From Salisapilia sapeloensis CBS 127946 (lineage: Eukaryota > Protista > Oomycota), in the NCBI GenBank assembly GCA_023334545.1, contig JAADVB010000125.1, positions 1 to 52,866 on the forward strand: a DNA stretch of 52,866 bases, read 5' to 3'. Positions 28,859 to 35,438 of the stretch are shown piece after piece. Under the pieces are notes generated by a model. The model did not search any database, had not been told where the DNA came from, and was given only the letters and a program-made list of their open reading frames with translations. The translations under genes were made by a program, and so were the position numbers. The stretch's first letter is position 1. Each line of letters starts with the position of its first letter.

Positions 28859-29419
28859 ATGGAGCAAATTGTGCAAATGCAAGATGATATTCACAAGCTC
28901 AAGAAGATGATGGACGCTGTCTTCGAGAAAATGTACTCCTCTAATACTCTACCGAAGTAGTTGTATGACAAGAGTTGTTGAATCGCGATGTGGTTGCTTG
29001 AATGGTAGTGAACAACACACATCCGACTCGCCATATAGTGCAGCAGACGCATACGGTATCCTTTTCTCAATCATACCTCCATATAGGTGCAGTATCATAA
29101 ATAGTATCTACAGGTGACAAAGATCGGATTGTCGAGATGCTCAACCGCCTCAGCTCCAAAGTACATCTTCTCAATAGCCTACTAGCTCCCTGCTTTCTAA
29201 CAGCCCACTTAGATGGCAGACGCAGACATGTCCAACCTAACGGCTGAGCCACTCAAAGACGCCACTGCAGCTGATATAGCTGTATGTATCTCTTAAATCC
29301 CCATGTTTCTATCATCCTAACACTCTCTCCAGGAGCTTAAACGCAAGATCGAAACGACTGAAACAGAACGACAGCACCTCCATCGTCGAGCCGGTGCGTC
29401 TTTCAAAGGTCTACAGTAA
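28859..29419 (+). CDS. Small 119-aa helical/coiled-coil protein, 5 exons (28859-28932, 28973-29055, 29114-29160, 29213-29281, 29333-29419)
   Basis: Four GT-AG introns (40, 58, 52, 51 nt; CTAAC branch-like motifs in the last two) give one continuous frame: MEQIVQMQDDIHKLKKMMDAVFEKIVVESR...GDKDRIVEMLNRLSSKMADAD...ELKRKIETTETERQHLHRRAGASFKGLQ. Confidence 0.72.
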
Positions 29420-29450
29420 GATACCCAAAGACAAATCCATTTTCGTTTTC

Positions 29451-31286
29451 TTATGCAAACGCAAACTCTTGACTCTCTGGCCAAATGTCTTGCGTCAGCT
29501 CCTGTTCTTCCTGCAGCTCCAGCGCTCTCGAAGCATTCGCAATCACATCCACCTTTTGCTTCTTCGGAGTCGGCTCTGCGTCACTGCTCTCCTGACTTCG
29601 CGAAATGGCTACTTGGGCACACTCTTCATCATACTCGGCTTGCAATTCTTCTGCCAGTTGATCCCAAATACCTTCTCGTTGCAGATAGAACTGCAAGTCT
29701 GCTTCGCTCTGGAACCAGTCTTCCCCCAGCACACTCTTACGTGTCGCGCCTGGCTTGAAGTAGTCGTATTCGAATCGACCTGGCTCATACCGCCATCCAC
29801 GTCGCACTAACATGTTCACAGCGATGCCGTTGGTCAATTGACGTGTCTGAGCTTCCACCAGACTAGCTGATCGCTTGCGTTGGACAGGTTCCTCCACCTT
29901 TTTCTCTATCTTGGCCTTGGGTTTCGTGCTTTTCACGTGTTTCTTGGCAGATTTAGGGGCAGGCTTAGATGCAGGTGTGTCCTGTCCAGACGCAGCGTCC
30001 TCTCTGGTAAAAGTAAACTCAGCAGGTTCATTCTTCATAGCTTCCTTCTTGACAGATTTCTTCTTGAGAGCTTCACGTCGTTTCTTATCGTCCAACCGAC
30101 GTTTAGTGCGTCCAAGATGCTTTTCAAATTCATCTGCTTCCATCTCATGGATCATATCGTCATGCTCTTGCTTGAGCTCTTCCCTCACGCGAGCCCAGAC
30201 TCCAGACTCTTTCAAGTAATTTTCCAACGCGACAGACGATTTAAAGTAGTTTTCACCTTCCTTTTGGTTGGACGTATCGTACGTCGGGGAAAAGTAGTCG
30301 TACTCGAACATACCTGGCTTGTGAGTCCATCCTTCTTCCTGTAGTTTATCATAGACGCGTCCGAATTTACATTCAAACGTTGGACCTTCGTACTTGAAGG
30401 TGGAAATAGCCACTTGATATGGATCCTCGTTATCTGTTTTCTTCGGTGCTTTCTTCTTCGCGTGGATCTTTTTATCCGCACTCGCTGTCTTGTATGGAGG
30501 CGTGATGAGGTCTTTTGTCGAAGCCGGAGATGGTGTATTAAAGATCTTCTTCCTTGCCTTCGACGTAGGTTTCTCTGTCTTTTTACTTAGTTTAGAAAAA
30601 TCGAGCTTCTGACGACCGTCAGCAGAGTCGCCGAGGTCAATGATGATCTTTTCATTCGCTAAACAACGACCGATGGTACACGCGACGCTCGTGAACATCG
30701 TTTCGTTCGGAATGAGTTGCGTAAATGGCGTATTCGGTTGGACAAACACTGTTTCCTGACCGAGCGCCATGGACGTCCAGTGAAAGTATTTTTGAGCAAT
30801 GTGCCATAGTCGATCCCACACTTGACGATCCTTTTCCTCTTGCTCCATCGCTTTCGAAGGATGCTTCGAAGCATCTTCCGCTGAAGTATAGAGGAATTTC
30901 CAACATGCATGCTCCTTACTTTCAAAGGTATTAATGTTCGGACGCAAGTCTTGGAACGTAGTGCCTGGCATGAGGCAGTAGGTAGCATCTGGACTCTCTA
31001 ACAAGTTCCATCCGCGGTTCTGAAGGACTTCCCAGATCAAGTCAAAGGATGTTTCGAATCTCTTTTTCGCCGATAAAGGACCTTCCGGAGACGATTGCAC
31101 CGATGTATTCTCCTTTTCTACCTCCTTTTCCCCTCCCTCTTCTACCACTGGTTCCTCTGCTTCATACTCGACGACTTGTGTGTTGGATAGCTGAATGTCA
31201 TCCATGGCATCCGCTCCAGATGAGACGAAGGCATCTGGATTAAAGTCAATATGTTGTTCAGACGATGGAGTATCTATCTCTGTCAT
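29451..31286 (-). CDS. Uncharacterised 611-aa protein with four GW repeats (possibly MBD/TAM-fold-like)
   Basis: Intact ORF; first ATG at 31286 (the track start at 31397 is TTG). Repeats begin IWEVLQNRGW, LWHIAQKYFHW, VYDKLQEEGW and AVNMLVRRGW, separated by Lys-rich linkers. Confidence 0.85.
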   Translation of the reverse strand: MTEIDTPSSEQHIDFNPDAFVSSGADAMDDIQLSNTQVVEYEAEEPVVEEGGEKEVEKENTSVQSSPEGPLSAKKRFETSFDLIWEVLQNRGWNLLESPDATYCLMPGTTFQDLRPNINTFESKEHACWKFLYTSAEDASKHPSKAMEQEEKDRQVWDRLWHIAQKYFHWTSMALGQETVFVQPNTPFTQLIPNETMFTSVACTIGRCLANEKIIIDLGDSADGRQKLDFSKLSKKTEKPTSKARKKIFNTPSPASTKDLITPPYKTASADKKIHAKKKAPKKTDNEDPYQVAISTFKYEGPTFECKFGRVYDKLQEEGWTHKPGMFEYDYFSPTYDTSNQKEGENYFKSSVALENYLKESGVWARVREELKQEHDDMIHEMEADEFEKHLGRTKRRLDDKKRREALKKKSVKKEAMKNEPAEFTFTREDAASGQDTPASKPAPKSAKKHVKSTKPKAKIEKKVEEPVQRKRSASLVEAQTRQLTNGIAVNMLVRRGWRYEPGRFEYDYFKPGATRKSVLGEDWFQSEADLQFYLQREGIWDQLAEELQAEYDEECAQVAISRSQESSDAEPTPKKQKVDVIANASRALELQEEQELTQDIWPESQEFAFA

Positions 31287-31488
31287 ATTCCCTACTCTTT
31301 CTACACCTCCAAGTACGAGTACACTCGATGTACTCAGCTCTAGAAAATTTAAATGGTGCTCCTCGCGCTTTTTGTCCGCTTTTGTCGTTCCCACCAAACG
31401 ATATGATTCGTAGATATTCTAAAACGTAGAATAAGAGTGGTAGAAATACAGGATAAGAAATGTAACTGATATTAAAAGTGATAAGCTC

Positions 31489-31524
31489 TTCCCGCCAAAA
31501 CGTTGAAAAAGGAAGCGCCAAAAA
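31489..31524 (-). promoter_or_regulatory. Two E2F-type sites in the bidirectional CDC6 promoter
   Basis: Reverse complements read TTTTGGCGGGAA (31489-31500) and TTTTTGGCGC (31515-31524), matching the E2F/DP consensus TTTSSCGS, 27-62 nt upstream of the CDC6 ATG. Confidence 0.7.
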
Positions 31525-31531
31525 CCATTTT
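31525..31531 (+). promoter_or_regulatory. Possible initiator (YCAYTYY-type) element upstream of CDC6
   Basis: CCATTTT fits the oomycete-type INR consensus, 20 nt before the ATG. The motif is short and low-information. Confidence 0.35.
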
Positions 31532-31551
31532 CCGATCGACTTCGAGACACG

Positions 31552-34500
31552 ATGGATGGACCATTGGGTGTATACTGGGTGCGTCTAGAGAATCAAAAGA
31601 TGCCGGTCCCTTGGCCGGCTTGTGTCTATCATAGCTATGACGCTGCGAGACGACATGGACATGACGTCTCGGTCTTCTATATGAACAAACCGGCGCTCGA
31701 ACCCGAAGATCGCGTCGTCTTCTTCTTCGGTCTCGATCCCCTTCACTTGAACAAGGACGATTCGATCAGTCCTAAAAAACAGCTTCTAAGCGCCCACCTC
31801 ACTTCGATCCATAAAACACCCTTCGAAGGCTCGTCGACCTTGCGGTCGATCGCCAAGACCATGGGCTTGTCTCGTCCGAACTTGGCGATGGCTGAGGACG
31901 ATGTTGAGCTTGAAGAAGCATGCAGACAAGCGAGTGACTTTTTACGACTGGAGAGTGATGACGCTGCAAGGGAATTCTTCTCGGCCTTAATGCTCCATTC
32001 GATTAATCAAGTGGAGGAGAATGCGTCTCAAGCCAGTGAAGAAGAGGCCAAGGAAGACGAAGAGCACACAAACGAAAATACAGAGCTATCTAGTCAGAAG
32101 ACTCAGCCGATCGAGACTGCATCAGCTCCAGCCTCTGAACCCACCGGTGGATTATCTATCCACATTCAAGACGAATGCTGGAAGAAGATGCAAGACGCTG
32201 GATGGAACACGATGGTGCTTTCTGGACAAGAGTTATTTAAAAAGCCTGGCGTCGGTTTTGGAAGCATGCAGCCTGGTATTAATATCTTCGACAACCTAAT
32301 GGACGCCTGCGCCATCTTTGTCTGTGAGCAACTGCAGAGCGAAAACGCTGATCCAGACCTCGTGTCCATGTTCTGGACGATGCTAGAGCAACAAGGATGG
32401 CAGACGATGTTTCTAAGCGGATCCCCTGTCTACGCCATGCCGAAAGTTAGCTTCGTGACCATGTTTCCTGATGTCAATCTCTTTAAAACGAAGCTAGAAG
32501 CCATCTCTAAGTACTTCAACAACAATGGTATGCTCCAAAGTAAACAGAAAGCAGTCGCCAAACCGAAACCCAAGTCTAAGTCGTCTTCAAATCTGTTTAA
32601 AAAGCCAAAAGAGCATGAAAGGAAAGAACCAACGTATCACCCAAGAGCTAGATCGACGAACAAACGCACGACAAATGTTCCGCATCGATATGACACGGGT
32701 GAAAAGCCCCGATCGAAACGTTCAACGGACGATTTAAAGCCTGGCGTGTTGGAAAAAGCTTTATTGGATCAAGGATGGTTCTATAAAGCTGGCAGCGTGG
32801 GTGGATCCTACACATACTACCGCCCGCACTGCAAAGGTGTCGACATCGAACGTCTGCAGTTCGGTCGTGATTACTACAGTAACCTCGAAGCAGTTGAGAT
32901 GGCTCTAAAAGCCAGTGGCGAGTACTATCCGCTAAAGGAAAAAGCACGAGCACCAATCACTACCACTGTGAAAGCATCTAAACCACAGCCAAAGAAAGTT
33001 GTACGAAAGCCCAAGGCTGAAACGAAGAAGCGAAAGATTAGCGAATCGGAGTTTGAGGATGAAGCAGACTGTATGGAATCGGAAGAGATGGTCACTCCGG
33101 AACCAAAAGAGCGTTTCACGAAGAAACGTAAGGCTTTATCTAACATCTCCAACGTCCGCGACGACATCTCTCCTGATACGGAGAAACCAAAGACACCTTC
33201 TATTCTGAAGAAACCAGCTCCATCTCGAAGTATCGCGACGAACTTTTCTCCAGACGTACATGACACACAACCACTCGAATCGACGGATTTAAACCAACTA
33301 CTAAAAGACGTGATGCCGAGACTGTCGACTGGTTTCATCCCGTCAGCATTTAATTATCGCAAGCAAGAGTGGAGTCAAATCGAAACGTTCCTTCGAGACT
33401 GTTTCCGACACACACAAGGTGCGAGTTTATACCTCTCTGGCGCTCCTGGGAGTGGTAAATCCGCGCTACTTTCGTCGGAAATGAATAATATCAAGGACAT
33501 GTACTATAACGAGACGAAAGACCGATCGGACGTGCCTACCTTTAAGAGTCTACACGTCAACGCCGTGACTTTGAAAGGTACATCTGCTCTATTTCAAACA
33601 GCAGCGAAAGAGCTGACGGGAGACACCTACACGTCTGGCGAGAAAGCATTGGAAGCGTTGGAACGAGCGACAGACATACAGTCGAGTAACGCTTCCATGC
33701 TGCTGTTGGTCATTGATGAAATCGACTTTTTATTGACACACAAGACGTGGGAAGGAGACTTGCTGCGTCTCTTTGAACTCGCACATCGACGCAACCATAG
33801 CCTCCTACTCGTTGGTGTCGCAAATCAAGTAGATTTCGCTGAAAGACATCTCGCGAGCTTACGCAAGCAGATGCCTCAATGCTCTCCTGCAACCGTTGTC
33901 TTCACTCCGTACTCGTTCATGTCGATCCAGAACATCTTGATCGATCGATTAGGCGGACGATCGGCGGCACAGAGACTGCTGGACATGAATGGACTAGCTT
34001 TCCTCGCTCGAAAAGTCTGCTCGACATCTGGAGACGTTCGACTTGCTCTCGACATTTGCCGCCGACTCTTGTCCAACGTCAATCAAGATAAGGAGAATGC
34101 GTTGAAGAAGAAAGGCCCGGTGGTTGGATTGAGTAAAGTGATTTCTGTCGTGAAACAGAGTCTGGATGCAGGTAGCTCGCATGTTGTCGAGTCCTTGCCT
34201 CGGAATCTAAAGCTTGTGCTTCTGGCATGCACTCGAGCGATGACGAGTGGCGGGAAAGATGATTCTGCGCGGTTGATTCCGACGAATGCATTGTACTCGA
34301 CGTATTCGGAGAATTTAGGCTCAGCAGGTGTCTCGAAGCGCATGAGTTCGCGAGAGTTTGCACAGAGCTTAGAGACGTTGGCGTCGAATGGGTTGCTTAG
34401 CTACAATGTAAAGAAGGGAGATACGGTCAAGCTGCTTTTCCGAACGAGTGATGTGCTGCAGACCTTGAGACGAGATGAGTTTATTGCAAGAGTCATGTAG
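31552..34500 (+). CDS. CDC6: Cell division control protein 6 (replication-licensing AAA+ ATPase) with extended N-terminus (PWWP-like domain plus three GW repeats), 982 aa
   Basis: SLYLSGAPGSGKS (Walker A, 33439-33462), LLLVIDEIDFLL (Walker B), LVGVANQVD, VFTPYS, FLARKVCSTSGDVRLALDICRR and a C-terminal winged-helix-like region. These match Cdc6 (SLYLSGAPGTGKT, ARKVSAVSGDVRKALDVCRR) better than Orc1. Confidence 0.9.
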   Translation: MDGPLGVYWVRLENQKMPVPWPACVYHSYDAARRHGHDVSVFYMNKPALEPEDRVVFFFGLDPLHLNKDDSISPKKQLLSAHLTSIHKTPFEGSSTLRSIAKTMGLSRPNLAMAEDDVELEEACRQASDFLRLESDDAAREFFSALMLHSINQVEENASQASEEEAKEDEEHTNENTELSSQKTQPIETASAPASEPTGGLSIHIQDECWKKMQDAGWNTMVLSGQELFKKPGVGFGSMQPGINIFDNLMDACAIFVCEQLQSENADPDLVSMFWTMLEQQGWQTMFLSGSPVYAMPKVSFVTMFPDVNLFKTKLEAISKYFNNNGMLQSKQKAVAKPKPKSKSSSNLFKKPKEHERKEPTYHPRARSTNKRTTNVPHRYDTGEKPRSKRSTDDLKPGVLEKALLDQGWFYKAGSVGGSYTYYRPHCKGVDIERLQFGRDYYSNLEAVEMALKASGEYYPLKEKARAPITTTVKASKPQPKKVVRKPKAETKKRKISESEFEDEADCMESEEMVTPEPKERFTKKRKALSNISNVRDDISPDTEKPKTPSILKKPAPSRSIATNFSPDVHDTQPLESTDLNQLLKDVMPRLSTGFIPSAFNYRKQEWSQIETFLRDCFRHTQGASLYLSGAPGSGKSALLSSEMNNIKDMYYNETKDRSDVPTFKSLHVNAVTLKGTSALFQTAAKELTGDTYTSGEKALEALERATDIQSSNASMLLLVIDEIDFLLTHKTWEGDLLRLFELAHRRNHSLLLVGVANQVDFAERHLASLRKQMPQCSPATVVFTPYSFMSIQNILIDRLGGRSAAQRLLDMNGLAFLARKVCSTSGDVRLALDICRRLLSNVNQDKENALKKKGPVVGLSKVISVVKQSLDAGSSHVVESLPRNLKLVLLACTRAMTSGGKDDSARLIPTNALYSTYSENLGSAGVSKRMSSREFAQSLETLASNGLLSYNVKKGDTVKLLFRTSDVLQTLRRDEFIARVM

Positions 34501-34521
34501 ACGATTTAATATCATGGAGAT

Positions 34522-35297
34522 TTACTTTTTGACGTATCGAGTTTCTATCTTTCGACTTGTACTTTTATAATCCGATTGCACCGTAAGTAGATTTGTGTTT
34601 CTAGATAAGGCTTGATGGAGAAGATGCTGCGAATCGAGTGGTAGAGAGTTGTTGGAAAAGTTCAGGAAGGACAGGTGCGAGTTGAATGTGAGCACGTAGG
34701 AAAGAGCGAGGACACCTGCTTGGTCTCGAAAGAGAGATACAAGGTTGGAAGAAATGTCCAGCGCAGAGATGCAACGGTGGAACGCAACTGCGCCGAGCAG
34801 GATACGGCATCCTTCTGGCTGAAGATCGTTGTCTGCAACGCTAAGCCAACCATCTTAAGATCTATTCGATAGATGTACATGTAGAGAGATCGTACTTGAG
34901 ATAGCGCAAGCTGGAGCGTTTGACTTCTATGCCCTTAGCAAGCGCTTTAACACCGCGGTAGTCTGGCCGATAGGGATTCCCGACAAGGTCAGACGAGTCG
35001 AGTTGCAAAAATTGGATGCATCCATTAAAGATCAAAGCTTTACCGACTATTTCTGCGCCAACGGGACCGATGGGCACATGCGAAAGTCTAGATCGATTTG
35101 ATCAGAAGAGGCAGCTTCCACGCTAGTATACTAACCTACCTCAAGTGGCGTAAAGTCGAACCTGGTTTCCCAATCTCGCTTCCAATCGTTTCGATATCGA
35201 ACTTACCCTCGAAAGAAAAATAGACCCGTGTCTCTTCTTCTCCACATCGATCAATCGCTTCTTGGATTTGACCAGCATCCGCCAACCGATTCCACAT
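34522..35297 (-). CDS. RNI-like leucine-rich repeat protein, 3 exons (35297-35140, 35087-34896, 34840-34522), 222 aa
   Basis: Introns of 52 and 55 nt restore frame. LRRs: LRHLRLSHVPIGPVGAEIVGKAL, LRYLNVADNDLQPEGCRILL, ISALDISSN, LSFLNFSNNSL. Confidence 0.82.
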
Positions 35298-35438
35298 TCT
35301 CTTCCACTTCCAAAGTTCGTTTTGCAAGTAGATATTGTAGATGCTCAGCAAGGCAGAAGAGAAAGATCCAATTCGTATATATAAATGCATTTCTATTTAG
35401 GGAAAGTCTACCTCGACTTTGTATAATATACTTCGCGA

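What the first reader, a model, noticed from the sequence alone, without database searches (positions are those of the whole stretch)
31567..31731. PWWP-like chromatin reader fused to Cdc6
Seen: GVYWVRLENQKMPVPWPACVY...RVVFFFG matches the PWWP pattern (WxKxxGxPxWPA...VxFFG). Known: PWWP domains bind H3K36me and DNA. In yeast, animal and plant licensing the reader (BAH, or PHD in plants) is on Orc1, and Cdc6 normally has only a short disordered N-terminus. Inference: chromatin targeting of licensing has moved onto Cdc6 in this lineage.
Basis: partly seen in the sequence, partly recalled or inferred. Interest (0 to 1): 0.72.

Follow-up and report, generated by a model that had tools for sequence, protein, structure and literature searches.

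The report
Oomycete Cdc6 with N-terminal PWWP domain
The replication-licensing ATPase Cdc6 of this oomycete, and of every oomycete checked, starts with a divergent PWWP-type chromatin-reader domain that databases do not annotate; whether that domain still reads histone marks is untested.

Summary
Residues 6-60 of a 982-residue, intron-free, transcribed ORF (31552-34500, +) carry the quoted motif.

**PWWP fold: supported, about 85%.**
- The motif opens a roughly 120-residue domain conserved in 11 oomycete orthologues.
- Pfam PWWP misses the window copy. It hits 5 of 10 orthologues below threshold, and nothing else credible hits.
- The AlphaFold model has five strands plus two helices.
- PWWP entries lead all three structure searches, but with weak scores.
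- A protein-language-model search also returns PWWP clusters.
- hhalign against a genuine PWWP gives E 5e-4.

**Cdc6 rather than Orc1: supported, about 85%.**
- The window protein scores 83 bits higher on a Cdc6 HMM than on an Orc1 HMM.
- A rooted tree nests the family inside Cdc6 and outside a well-supported Orc1 clade.
- An AU test does not reject the Orc1 grouping (p 0.28).

**"Chromatin targeting has moved onto Cdc6": not shown.**
- One of the three canonical cage aromatics is missing.
- The domain is not basic.
- The Orc1 of this genome could not be read. An unchecked scan note calls it BAH-less.

The N-terminal extension also holds three "GW" modules of unresolved fold. These are shared with a divergently transcribed paralogue.

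The scan noted this same stretch twice (s1-307750). I found no paper describing the fusion. Verdict: a new variant of a known kind, of moderate interest.

The parts
31552..34500 (+). Single-exon ORF of 982 aa: oomycete Cdc6 orthologue with a ~590-aa N-terminal extension
   Evidence: ORF list. Orthologues of 988-1364 aa in Phytophthora, Globisporangium, Pythium, Lagenidium, Albugo, Aphanomyces and Thraustotheca.
31474..34553 (+). Transcript-like contig covering the whole ORF without gaps (78-nt leader, ~53-nt trailer)
   Evidence: X1 record 2 spans 31474-34553 with 0 differences. The neighbour's contig stops at 31359 and 31373-31423 is uncovered in both runs. X2 record 4 carries spliced joints. 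X6 has an A-run plus adaptor at 34530.
31564..31911 (+). Divergent PWWP domain, residues ~5-120: five-strand barrel (6-90) plus two C-terminal helices (94-119)
   Evidence: AF2 model, pLDDT 70.6, strands 6-12, 21-26, 53-58, 78-82, 86-90, helices 94-103 and 108-119. Foldseek top 50 all PWWP. VIA best hit BRPF1 PWWP, Z 5.5. Atlas NSD2 PWWP, TM 0.51. ESM features top hits PWWP clusters. hhalign E 5e-4.
31606..31617 (+). PWWP-motif equivalent V-P-W-P (V-F-W-P in most orthologues) at the start of strand 2; W21 and P22 invariant
31720..31731 (+). F-F-F-G at the end of strand 3; F58 sits at the canonical third cage position; G60 invariant
   Evidence: The cage assignment rests on recalled LEDGF/DNMT3 alignments (inference).
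31927..32151 (+). Acidic low-complexity stretch, residues 126-200 (pI 4.1)
32158..32547 (+). Two type-A GW modules (G-W at residues 217 and 282)
   Evidence: The same modules in the same order occur in orthologues and in the neighbour gene.
32731..32961 (+). Type-B GW module, residues 394-470: confident small alpha/beta fold of unresolved class
   Evidence: A4 alignment of 22 modules. AF2 pLDDT 91.4. No clear fold match.
32962..33321 (+). Lysine-rich linker with four S/T-P sites and K/R clusters, residues 471-590
   Evidence: S/T-P at 515, 540, 548, 566. Their role as CDK sites or a nuclear signal is inferred.
33334..34101 (+). Cdc6-type AAA+ module with intact Walker A (33439-33462), Walker B (33709-33726), sensor 1 (33814-33834) and sensor 2 (34027-34053)
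   Evidence: Pfam AAA_22/AAA_16/AAA. Alignment to human Cdc6 8s0e_G. Motif positions.
34183..34497 (+). C-terminal winged-helix domain
   Evidence: Pfam Cdc6_C 22.6 bits, below the cut-off of 25.1. The family profile aligns to human Cdc6 through position 399 of 414.
29451..31286 (-). Divergently transcribed paralogue made only of GW modules (two type A, two type B), without PWWP or ATPase; not part of the protein but of its conserved locus
   Evidence: The same head-to-head pair occurs in Phytophthora ramorum (L002; 31% identity, E 7e-89).

Best explanation
The gene encodes the oomycete orthologue of the licensing ATPase Cdc6. In the oomycete lineage it acquired a long N-terminal extension in front of an intact Cdc6 AAA+ and winged-helix core. 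The extension is a divergent PWWP domain at the extreme N-terminus, an acidic stretch, three (elsewhere four) GW modules, and a lysine-rich linker with S/T-P sites.

Shown here:
- The domain is real, conserved from Saprolegniales to Peronosporales, and predicted to adopt the PWWP topology.
- The ATPase module is Cdc6-type with all catalytic motifs.
- The whole ORF lies on one transcript.

Inferred: the PWWP barrel, perhaps together with the GW modules and basic linkers, tethers Cdc6 to chromatin. Cdc6 would then bring its own chromatin contact to ORC-bound sites before MCM loading.

The ligand is open. W21 and F58 keep two cage positions. The third is Pro, Gln or Met, and the domain is not basic. 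A canonical H3K36me3-plus-DNA mode is therefore only one possibility, and a modified cage or a protein partner is about as likely.
For: PWWP domain:
- Conservation in 11 orthologues.
- Pfam PWWP hits 5 of 10 orthologues at 16.5-21.3 bits; the only other hit is one chance-level match, E 0.12.
- AF2 topology of five strands plus two helices.
- Foldseek PDB top 50 are all PWWP.
- VIA against 48,161 chains: BRPF1 PWWP first, Z 5.5 over 97 residues. Among the leading rows, the matches that span the whole model (barrel plus helices) are PWWP-type.
- Atlas shape search: NSD2 PWWP, TM 0.51.
- ESM features: the top hits are PWWP clusters.
- hhalign against the Pfam-significant PWWP of P0227: E 5e-4 over 68 columns, with 0 of 300 shuffles reaching that score.

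Cdc6 identity:
- The profile search of 1.84 billion proteins returns mostly Cdc6-like proteins in the top 150.
- HMM classification: +83 bits for the window and +55 to +113 for all 13 family members. Held-out controls separate cleanly.
- The rooted careful tree nests the family in a 95/89 Cdc6 subclade, apart from the 95/93 Orc1 clade.
- PDB profile scores: human Cdc6 185 against Orc1 154; yeast 123 against 87.
- Published census: one cdc6 and one orc1 per oomycete (PMC7058166, Suppl. Table 1).

Expression: transcript-like contigs cover the whole ORF.
Against: - The window copy has no Pfam PWWP hit at all, and no orthologue reaches the gathering score.
- Profile searches of PDB sequences find no PWWP.
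- Structure scores are weak: Foldseek E 0.04, TM 0.43, VIA Z 5.5. The tool itself says Z under 8 can be a common arrangement.
- The model is only medium confidence (pLDDT 70.6, with loop 61-74 under 50).
- The first cage aromatic is missing in every family member, and the barrel has pI 4.6-8.6. This argues against the classical methyl-lysine-plus-DNA mode.
- The AU test does not reject grouping the family with Orc1 (p 0.28).
- The Cdc6 training set was chosen by similarity to the family, which may inflate the HMM margin.
Confidence: 0.6

Rival explanations
1. The fold is a PWWP relic that no longer reads chromatin. It serves as a protein-protein interaction or regulatory module, for example for ORC, Cdt1, cyclin-CDK or degradation control. 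Chromatin contact, if any, comes from the GW modules and basic linkers.
For: The first cage aromatic is replaced in all 11 sequences (cage positions recalled from LEDGF/DNMT3). The domain is near-neutral to acidic in most species. The conserved residues between strands 2 and 3 (S28, Y29, A32, D38, K46, P47, L49, E52, D53) are family-specific and not PWWP-like.
Against: W21 and F58, the two best conserved cage positions, are kept over the whole oomycete radiation. The extension pairs the domain with other small modules of nucleic-acid-binder-like shape. Readers on licensing factors have precedents: Orc1 BAH, Marchantia Cdc6 MBD, and environmental Orc1 with PWWP.
Confidence: 0.28
2. The protein is not Cdc6. 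It is a divergent Orc1, or an undifferentiated Orc1/Cdc6, in which a PWWP replaced the BAH domain.
For: The AU tests do not reject family plus Orc1 as one group. Drosophila Orc1 and Cdc6 tie against the family profile, and Drosophila Orc1 beats Drosophila Cdc6 for the single sequence. The family sits on a long branch (1.07-1.21). An environmental Orc1 does carry a PWWP.
Against: The Orc1 clade excludes the family at SH-aLRT 100 and 95/93. The HMM margin of +55 to +113 bits lies in the range of held-out Cdc6, opposite in sign to held-out Orc1, and above the archaeal control at +23. The family profile aligns to Cdc6 through lid and winged helix, but to Orc1 only to position 267. A published census lists both a cdc6 and an orc1 in five oomycetes. 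A scan note reports a separate ORC1 in this genome (s1-314898, unchecked).
Confidence: 0.1
3. The PWWP-like letters are a chance resemblance on a generic SH3-like or Tudor-like barrel that is not homologous to PWWP domains.
For: All sequence scores are below curated thresholds. Tudor, chromo, SH3 and KOW barrels follow closely in the VIA list (Z 3.5-4.4). One shuffle reached an hhalign score of 25.5 against the real 26.9.
Against: Several different methods all put PWWP first, though most of them rest on the same family alignment or AF2 model. Among the leading VIA rows, the matches that also cover the C-terminal helices are PWWP-type. The W-P and F-F-G landmarks fall on strands 2 and 3, as in PWWP.
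Confidence: 0.07

Closest known systems
PWWP domains of NSD2, BRPF1, DNMT3A/B and LEDGF (Pfam PF00855, Royal superfamily)
   Same: Five-strand barrel followed by helices. The W-P motif opens strand 2 and F-F-G ends strand 3. These are the top structural and feature matches.
   Different: Below the Pfam threshold. Long family-specific inserts between strands 2-3 and 3-4. The first cage aromatic is absent. The domain is near-neutral instead of basic. It is attached to Cdc6 rather than to a chromatin modifier.
Orc1 BAH domain (animals, yeast) and the plant Orc1 BAH-PHD cassette
   Same: A histone-reading module at the N-terminus of an Orc1/Cdc6-family licensing ATPase, separated from the AAA+ core by a long linker.
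   Different: A different fold (BAH, not PWWP) on a different paralogue (Orc1, not Cdc6). Here no BAH is detectable.
Marchantia polymorpha / M. paleacea Cdc6 with an N-terminal MBD (P0104, P0168)
   Same: A Cdc6 orthologue with a DNA/chromatin-binding domain at its N-terminus. This shows that Cdc6 can acquire such modules.
   Different: The module is a Pfam-significant methyl-CpG-binding domain, not a PWWP. The lineage is unrelated, so the gain is independent.
Environmental Orc1 P0227 (PWWP + BAH + AAA+), sister to Hondaea (labyrinthulid) Orc1 in the trees
   Same: A PWWP on a licensing ATPase of a probable stramenopile. Its PWWP is the one that aligns to the oomycete domain (E 5e-4).
   Different: It sits on Orc1 and keeps the BAH. 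Its PWWP passes Pfam at 53.5 bits.
Canonical Cdc6 (human, Drosophila, yeast; other SAR-group Cdc6 such as Bigelowiella P0053)
   Same: AAA+ core, lid and winged helix with intact Walker A/B and sensor motifs. S/T-P sites precede the ATPase.
   Different: Canonical N-termini are 35-260 residues without a Pfam domain. Here about 590 residues (about 800-970 in the full-length orthologues) hold PWWP and GW modules.

Membership tests
PWWP domain (PF00855) | Match to the Pfam model at or above the gathering score (25.6 bits) | tested here: not met
   Window copy: no hit even at E 10. Orthologues: 5 of 10 hit at 16.5-21.3 bits, E 4e-4 to 1.3e-2.
PWWP domain (PF00855) | Five-stranded beta-barrel followed by a C-terminal helical bundle | tested here: met
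   AF2 model from a 7-sequence alignment: strands 6-12, 21-26, 53-58, 78-82, 86-90; helices 94-103, 108-119; pLDDT 70.6, pTM 0.67.
PWWP domain (PF00855) | P-W-W-P-type motif at the start of strand 2 | tested here: met
   V-P-W-P at residues 19-22 (V-F-W-P in most orthologues). W21 and P22 are invariant in 11 sequences and lie on predicted strand 2.
PWWP domain (PF00855) | Significant structural similarity to solved PWWP domains | tested here: inconclusive
   PWWP ranks first everywhere, but the scores are weak: Foldseek E 0.04, TM 0.43; VIA Z 5.5, rmsd 4.1, 97 aligned; Atlas TM 0.51.
PWWP domain (PF00855) | Three-residue aromatic cage for methyl-lysine | tested here: inconclusive
   By alignment, W21 and F58 occupy two cage positions. 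The position three residues before W21 is Pro (Gln or Met region in orthologues). The canonical positions are recalled from LEDGF/DNMT3/BRPF1, not computed. No model coordinates were available.
PWWP domain (PF00855) | Binding of methylated histone tails and/or DNA | not testable with these tools
   Only composition could be examined: pI 6.6 for residues 1-95 and 4.6-8.6 in orthologues. This is not the basic surface usual for DNA-binding PWWPs.
Cdc6 | AAA+ core with Walker A, Walker B, sensor 1 and sensor 2 | tested here: met
   G-A-P-G-S-G-K-S at 630-637, V-I-D-E-I-D at 720-725, the sensor 1 stretch at 755-761, and S-G-D-V-R at 826-830, all aligned to human Cdc6.
Cdc6 | C-terminal winged helix (Pfam Cdc6_C) | tested here: inconclusive
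   22.6 bits against the cut-off of 25.1. The family profile aligns to human Cdc6 up to position 399 of 414.
Cdc6 | Groups with Cdc6 and not with Orc1 | tested here: met
   HMM margin +83 bits, with clean held-out controls. The rooted careful tree nests the family in a Cdc6 subclade at 95/89. Caveat: AU p 0.28 for the Orc1 grouping.
Cdc6 | A separate Orc1 exists in the same genome | not testable with these tools
   Only the window is readable. The leads are the census in PMC7058166 and the unchecked scan note s1-314898.
Orc1 | Membership of the Orc1 clade | tested here: not met
   The Orc1 clade of 33 rows (SH-aLRT 100) or 16 rows (95/93) excludes the family.
Orc1 | N-terminal BAH domain | tested here: not met
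   No BAH hit at E up to 1 on the full protein. BAH is patchy in Orc1 anyway (PMC7058166).
MBD/TAM domain (for the GW modules) | Sequence or fold match to methyl-CpG-binding or TAM domains | tested here: inconclusive
   Pfam MBD hits 0 of 22 modules. hhalign against the Marchantia Cdc6 MBD gives E 0.12 over 12 columns. Foldseek's top hit is BAZ2A TAM at E 0.47. In VIA, MBDs score Z 3.1-3.4, below unrelated hits at 4.7 and level with dsRBDs.

The most novel reading that the evidence does not exclude
In oomycetes the chromatin-reading task of origin licensing sits on Cdc6 rather than on Orc1. Orc1 would be BAH-less. Cdc6 would carry a PWWP with a remodelled cage plus three or four GW modules, and a GW-only paralogue expressed from the same bidirectional promoter would compete for or cooperate at the same chromatin sites. 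Where MCM is loaded would then be set partly by what Cdc6 reads.
Probability: 0.25. Interest if true: 0.75.

Novelty: new variant of a known kind. Interest (0 to 1): 0.55.

Why it matters
How origins are chosen outside yeast and animals is poorly understood, and the known chromatin readers of licensing sit on Orc1. A Cdc6 that carries its own reader-type domain, conserved through the oomycete lineages sampled, would be a second route for chromatin to influence MCM loading. It occurs in a group that includes major plant and animal pathogens, some of which are transformable. The domain is invisible to standard annotation: sources name these proteins "AAA ATPase" or "hypothetical protein". The architecture is therefore likely missed in comparative surveys of ORC and Cdc6. 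Together with the Marchantia Cdc6-MBD and an environmental Orc1 with PWWP plus BAH, it suggests that licensing factors pick up chromatin modules repeatedly.

Tried and rejected
- **Word-index search with residues 1-120** found nothing. This reflects the tool's limited sensitivity, not absence of relatives.
- **PDB sequence searches** with the N-terminal profiles (A1, A3) and with the Pythium copy gave only chance hits: CNG channel and mL100 repeats.
- **Orc1 hypothesis.** I first took long proteins in the hit list for Orc1. Pfam showed most are Cdc6 with long N-termini, and only P0100 has a BAH. P0139 (Physarum) and P0086 (Tieghemostelium) were mislabelled by me and score as Cdc6.
- **The unrooted 105-row quick tree cannot decide Cdc6 against Orc1.** The constrained search even found a better tree than the free quick search. 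I therefore added an archaeal outgroup and a careful search.
- **Only one archaeal outgroup** was recovered from genome contigs, so the rooting rests on a single very long branch.
- **Search for an oomycete Orc1** with an environmental Orc1 query returned 77 Orc1 proteins, none from oomycetes. The BAH status of oomycete Orc1 stays untested.
- **GW modules as MBD/TAM.** Not supported by Pfam or hhalign, and ambiguous by fold.
- **Literature searches** for PWWP with Cdc6 and for Cdc6 with Phytophthora or oomycete found no description of this architecture.
Full report
**1. What is at the coordinates**

The flagged stretch 31567-31731 (+) encodes residues 6-60 of a 982-residue ORF, 31552-34500, with no intron. 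The quoted letters are present as written. There is a W-V-R-L strand, V-P-W-P-A-C-V at residues 19-25, and V-V-F-F-F-G at residues 55-60.

Pfam finds only P-loop/AAA models at residues 602-767. It also gives a sub-threshold Cdc6_C winged helix at 878-956 (22.6 bits against a cut-off of 25.1). Nothing at all is found on residues 1-120, even at E 10.

**2. The gene is expressed as one unit**

Contigs of two small public runs from one study lie on the locus in a transcript-like way.
- One contig covers 31474-34553 with no difference and no gap.
- The contig of the divergent neighbour stops at 31359 or 31372.
- The promoter gap 31373-31423 is uncovered in both runs.
- A second contig carries two short joints with CT..AC ends. 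These are introns of a convergent minus-strand gene.

The tool records the RNA label of these runs only as a guess. Contig ends at gene ends, together with spliced joints, are what RNA gives. Two runs of a related organism (90-95% alike) hold the gene in pieces, one ending in an A-run plus adaptor at 34530. PWWP-like head and ATPase therefore sit on one mRNA, and the ATG at 31552 is its first long-ORF start.

**3. The family**

A search with the ATPase part found orthologues at 40-43% identity and 1212-1335 residues in Globisporangium, Phytophthora and Pythium, and a partial one in Aphanomyces. A profile search of 1.84 billion representatives, with name look-ups, added:
- Phytophthora boehmeriae
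- Lagenidium giganteum
- Albugo laibachii
- Aphanomyces euteiches, A. cochlioides and A. stellatus
- Thraustotheca clavata
- two environmental proteins

No member is closer than about 44% identity to the window protein. The genome is therefore an oomycete lineage not held at close range in these collections. An earlier scan note (s1-307709) also calls it an oomycete.

**4. Is the N-terminus a conserved domain?**

Yes. In 11 orthologues spanning Saprolegniales, Albugo and Peronosporales (A3), W21, P22, A32, D38, P47, V55 and G60 are invariant. W9, A23, S28, Y29, K46, L49, E52, D53 and F59 are nearly so. An HMM of this alignment finds the domain only at the N-terminus of family members among the 265 proteins fetched. 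Other SAR-group Cdc6 proteins have short N-termini without a Pfam domain.

**5. Is it a PWWP?**

Sequence evidence:
- Pfam PWWP hits 5 of 10 orthologues at 16.5-21.3 bits (E 4e-4 to 1.3e-2), below the 25.6-bit gathering score. The only other hit is a chance-level SPARC match in one sequence.
- hhalign of A3 against the Pfam-significant PWWP (53.5 bits) of an environmental Orc1, P0227, gives E 5e-4 over 68 columns. The W-V-K strand, the W-P-A motif, the E-D-R..F-F-G strand and the following C-H all line up.
- None of 300 shuffles of that PWWP reaches the real score of 26.9 (mean 11.5, maximum 25.5). The reversed sequence scores 10.4.
- Profile searches of PDB sequences are negative.

Structure evidence:
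- The AlphaFold model from the 7-sequence alignment has pLDDT 70.6 and pTM 0.67. It has five strands followed by two helices, which is the PWWP layout. The strand 3-4 loop (61-74) is poorly modelled.
- The top 50 Foldseek matches in the PDB are all PWWP domains (NSD2, Shuguo, DNMT3A, NSD3, BRPF2). The best has only E 0.04 and TM 0.43.
- An aligner independent of Foldseek, run on 48,161 chains, puts BRPF1 PWWP first (Z 5.5, 97 residues), then other PWWPs, then Tudor, chromo and SH3-like barrels at Z 3.5-4.4. Among the leading rows, the matches that also span the helices are PWWP-type.
- The ESM Atlas shape search puts NSD2 PWWP first (TM 0.51), then Agenet.
- The Atlas feature search returns PWWP clusters as its top hits at 0.86-0.87.

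No single result is strong, and the tools warn that such scores can be chance. Several different methods nevertheless agree on the same small family, although most of them rest on the same alignment or model. The sequence landmarks also fall on the right strands. I put the PWWP fold at about 85%.

**6. Can it read what PWWPs read?**

This is inference. From recalled alignments of LEDGF, DNMT3A/B and BRPF1, the cage has three positions:
- an aromatic three residues before the W of W-P;
- that W itself;
- the aromatic two residues before the G of F-F-G.

Here W21 and F58 are kept (Y in Aphanomyces at the latter). The first position is Pro in the window and Gln or Met in the orthologues. The P0227 PWWP also lacks it. 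The barrel has pI 6.6, and 4.6-8.6 in orthologues. This is unlike the basic surface usual for DNA-binding PWWPs. H3K36me-plus-DNA binding cannot be assumed.

**7. Cdc6 or Orc1?**

- *Single sequence against the PDB:* human Cdc6 113.7 bits against human Orc1 98.6. In Drosophila, however, Orc1 scores 96.4 and Cdc6 74.5.
- *Family profile against the PDB:* human Cdc6 185 against Orc1 154; yeast 123 against 87; Drosophila tied at about 152. Cdc6 is aligned through the winged helix and Orc1 only to position 267.
- *Top 150 of the big profile search:* mostly Cdc6-like by length, Pfam and source names. A targeted search supplied 77 Orc1 proteins from plants, algae, animals, fungi, Hondaea and Anaeramoeba.
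- *HMMs built from 55 Cdc6 and 33 Orc1 sequences:* held-out Cdc6 score +63 to +220 bits and held-out Orc1 score -254 to -63. The window protein scores +83, all 13 family members +55 to +113, and an archaeal Orc1/Cdc6 +23.
- *Quick 105-row tree:* the Orc1 clade (SH-aLRT 100) excludes the family. Unrooted, this cannot decide the question, and a constrained search even found a better tree.
- *Careful 48-row tree with one archaeal outgroup (L001):* the root falls between Orc1 (95/93) and everything else (83/43). The family nests inside a 95/89 subclade of Cdc6 that includes Bigelowiella and other protist sequences.
- *AU test:* holding the family with Orc1 costs 6.4 log-likelihood units, p 0.28, which is not rejected.
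- *Published census:* one cdc6 and one orc1 in each of four oomycetes, and two cdc6 plus one orc1 in Phytophthora infestans (PMC7058166, Suppl. Table 1).
- *Scan note:* s1-314898 reports a BAH-less ORC1 elsewhere in this genome. I could not read it.

Overall I put Cdc6 at about 85%.

**8. The rest of the extension**

After the PWWP come:
- an acidic stretch (126-200);
- two type-A GW modules (G-W at residues 217 and 282);
- a basic linker;
- one type-B GW module (394-470);
- a lysine-rich linker with four S/T-P sites.

Orthologues have two type-B modules. The type-B module folds with pLDDT 91.4 as helix, hairpin and two helices, but it has no clear fold match:
- Foldseek's best hit is the BAZ2A TAM domain at E 0.47.
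- The wide aligner gives Z 4.7 for unrelated proteins, 3-4 for dsRBDs and 3.1-3.4 for MBDs.
- Pfam MBD hits none of 22 modules.
- hhalign against the Marchantia Cdc6 MBD gives E 0.12.

The divergent neighbour (29451-31286, minus) consists of the same modules without PWWP or ATPase. The same head-to-head pair exists in Phytophthora ramorum.

**9. Comparison with what is known**

Readers on licensing factors are known on Orc1: BAH in animals and yeast, and BAH-PHD in plants. BAH is patchy across eukaryotes (PMC7058166).

Marchantia Cdc6 has a Pfam-significant MBD. An environmental Orc1 close to labyrinthulid Orc1 has PWWP plus BAH.

I found no paper describing a PWWP on Cdc6 or the oomycete Cdc6 architecture. 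Source names for the orthologues are "AAA ATPase", "hypothetical protein" or "cell division control protein".

**10. Verdict**

- The evolutionary inference that reading moved from Orc1 to Cdc6, and the ligand, remain open.

This is a new variant of a known kind: a lineage-wide, unannotated reader-type domain on Cdc6. It is of moderate interest and readily testable in Phytophthora.

Noticed in passing
window 29451-31397 (-) and L002:3551-5785 (-): The GW-only paralogue transcribed divergently from Cdc6 is conserved in the same head-to-head position in Phytophthora ramorum (31% identity, E 7e-89). The pair is therefore old, not a local duplication. By the RNA-like contig, the likely start of the window copy is the ATG at 31286, not the TTG at 31397.
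   Followed up: partly
window 32731-32961 (+); also 32158-32547 (+), 30153-30380 (-) and 29613-29846 (-): The GW module is a confidently predicted small alpha/beta domain (pLDDT 91.4) without a clear fold match. TAM/MBD and dsRBD are weak look-alikes. An environmental Cdc6 (P0036, 1564 aa) has similar modules that touch Pfam DUF7028 at 25.6 bits (cut-off 27).
   Followed up: partly
P0104 / P0168 (Marchantia Cdc6), residues 19-85: Liverwort Cdc6 carries a Pfam-significant methyl-CpG-binding domain (50.4 bits) at its N-terminus. This is an independent case of a DNA/chromatin module on Cdc6.
   Followed up: partly
P0227 (environmental Orc1, 924 aa), residues 116-197 and 328-457: An Orc1 with both a PWWP (53.5 bits) and a BAH domain, grouping with Hondaea (labyrinthulid) Orc1. 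Its PWWP is the best sequence match found for the oomycete Cdc6 domain.
   Followed up: partly
window 34462-34523 and 34841-34895: Two short introns (62 and 55 nt, CT..AC, so GT..AG on the minus strand) of a convergent downstream gene. The first spans the Cdc6 stop codon at 34498-34500, so the 3' ends of the two transcripts overlap antisense. One assembler joined them into a single contig.
   Followed up: no
window 31460-31465: An ATG-TAA mini upstream ORF in the leader. It lies inside one run's contig (5' end at 31424) but upstream of the other's (5' end at 31474).
   Followed up: no
P0020 (Aphanomyces stellatus, 1707 aa), residues 69-176: The public gene model of this orthologue is fused at its N-terminus to a copia-type gag fragment. 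This is probably a model or insertion artefact and hides its PWWP region.
   Followed up: no
runs X5, X6 on window 29400-35300: A second organism label holds both genes at 90-95% nucleotide identity in 2025 runs. This suggests a close relative of the window's organism with public data.
   Followed up: no
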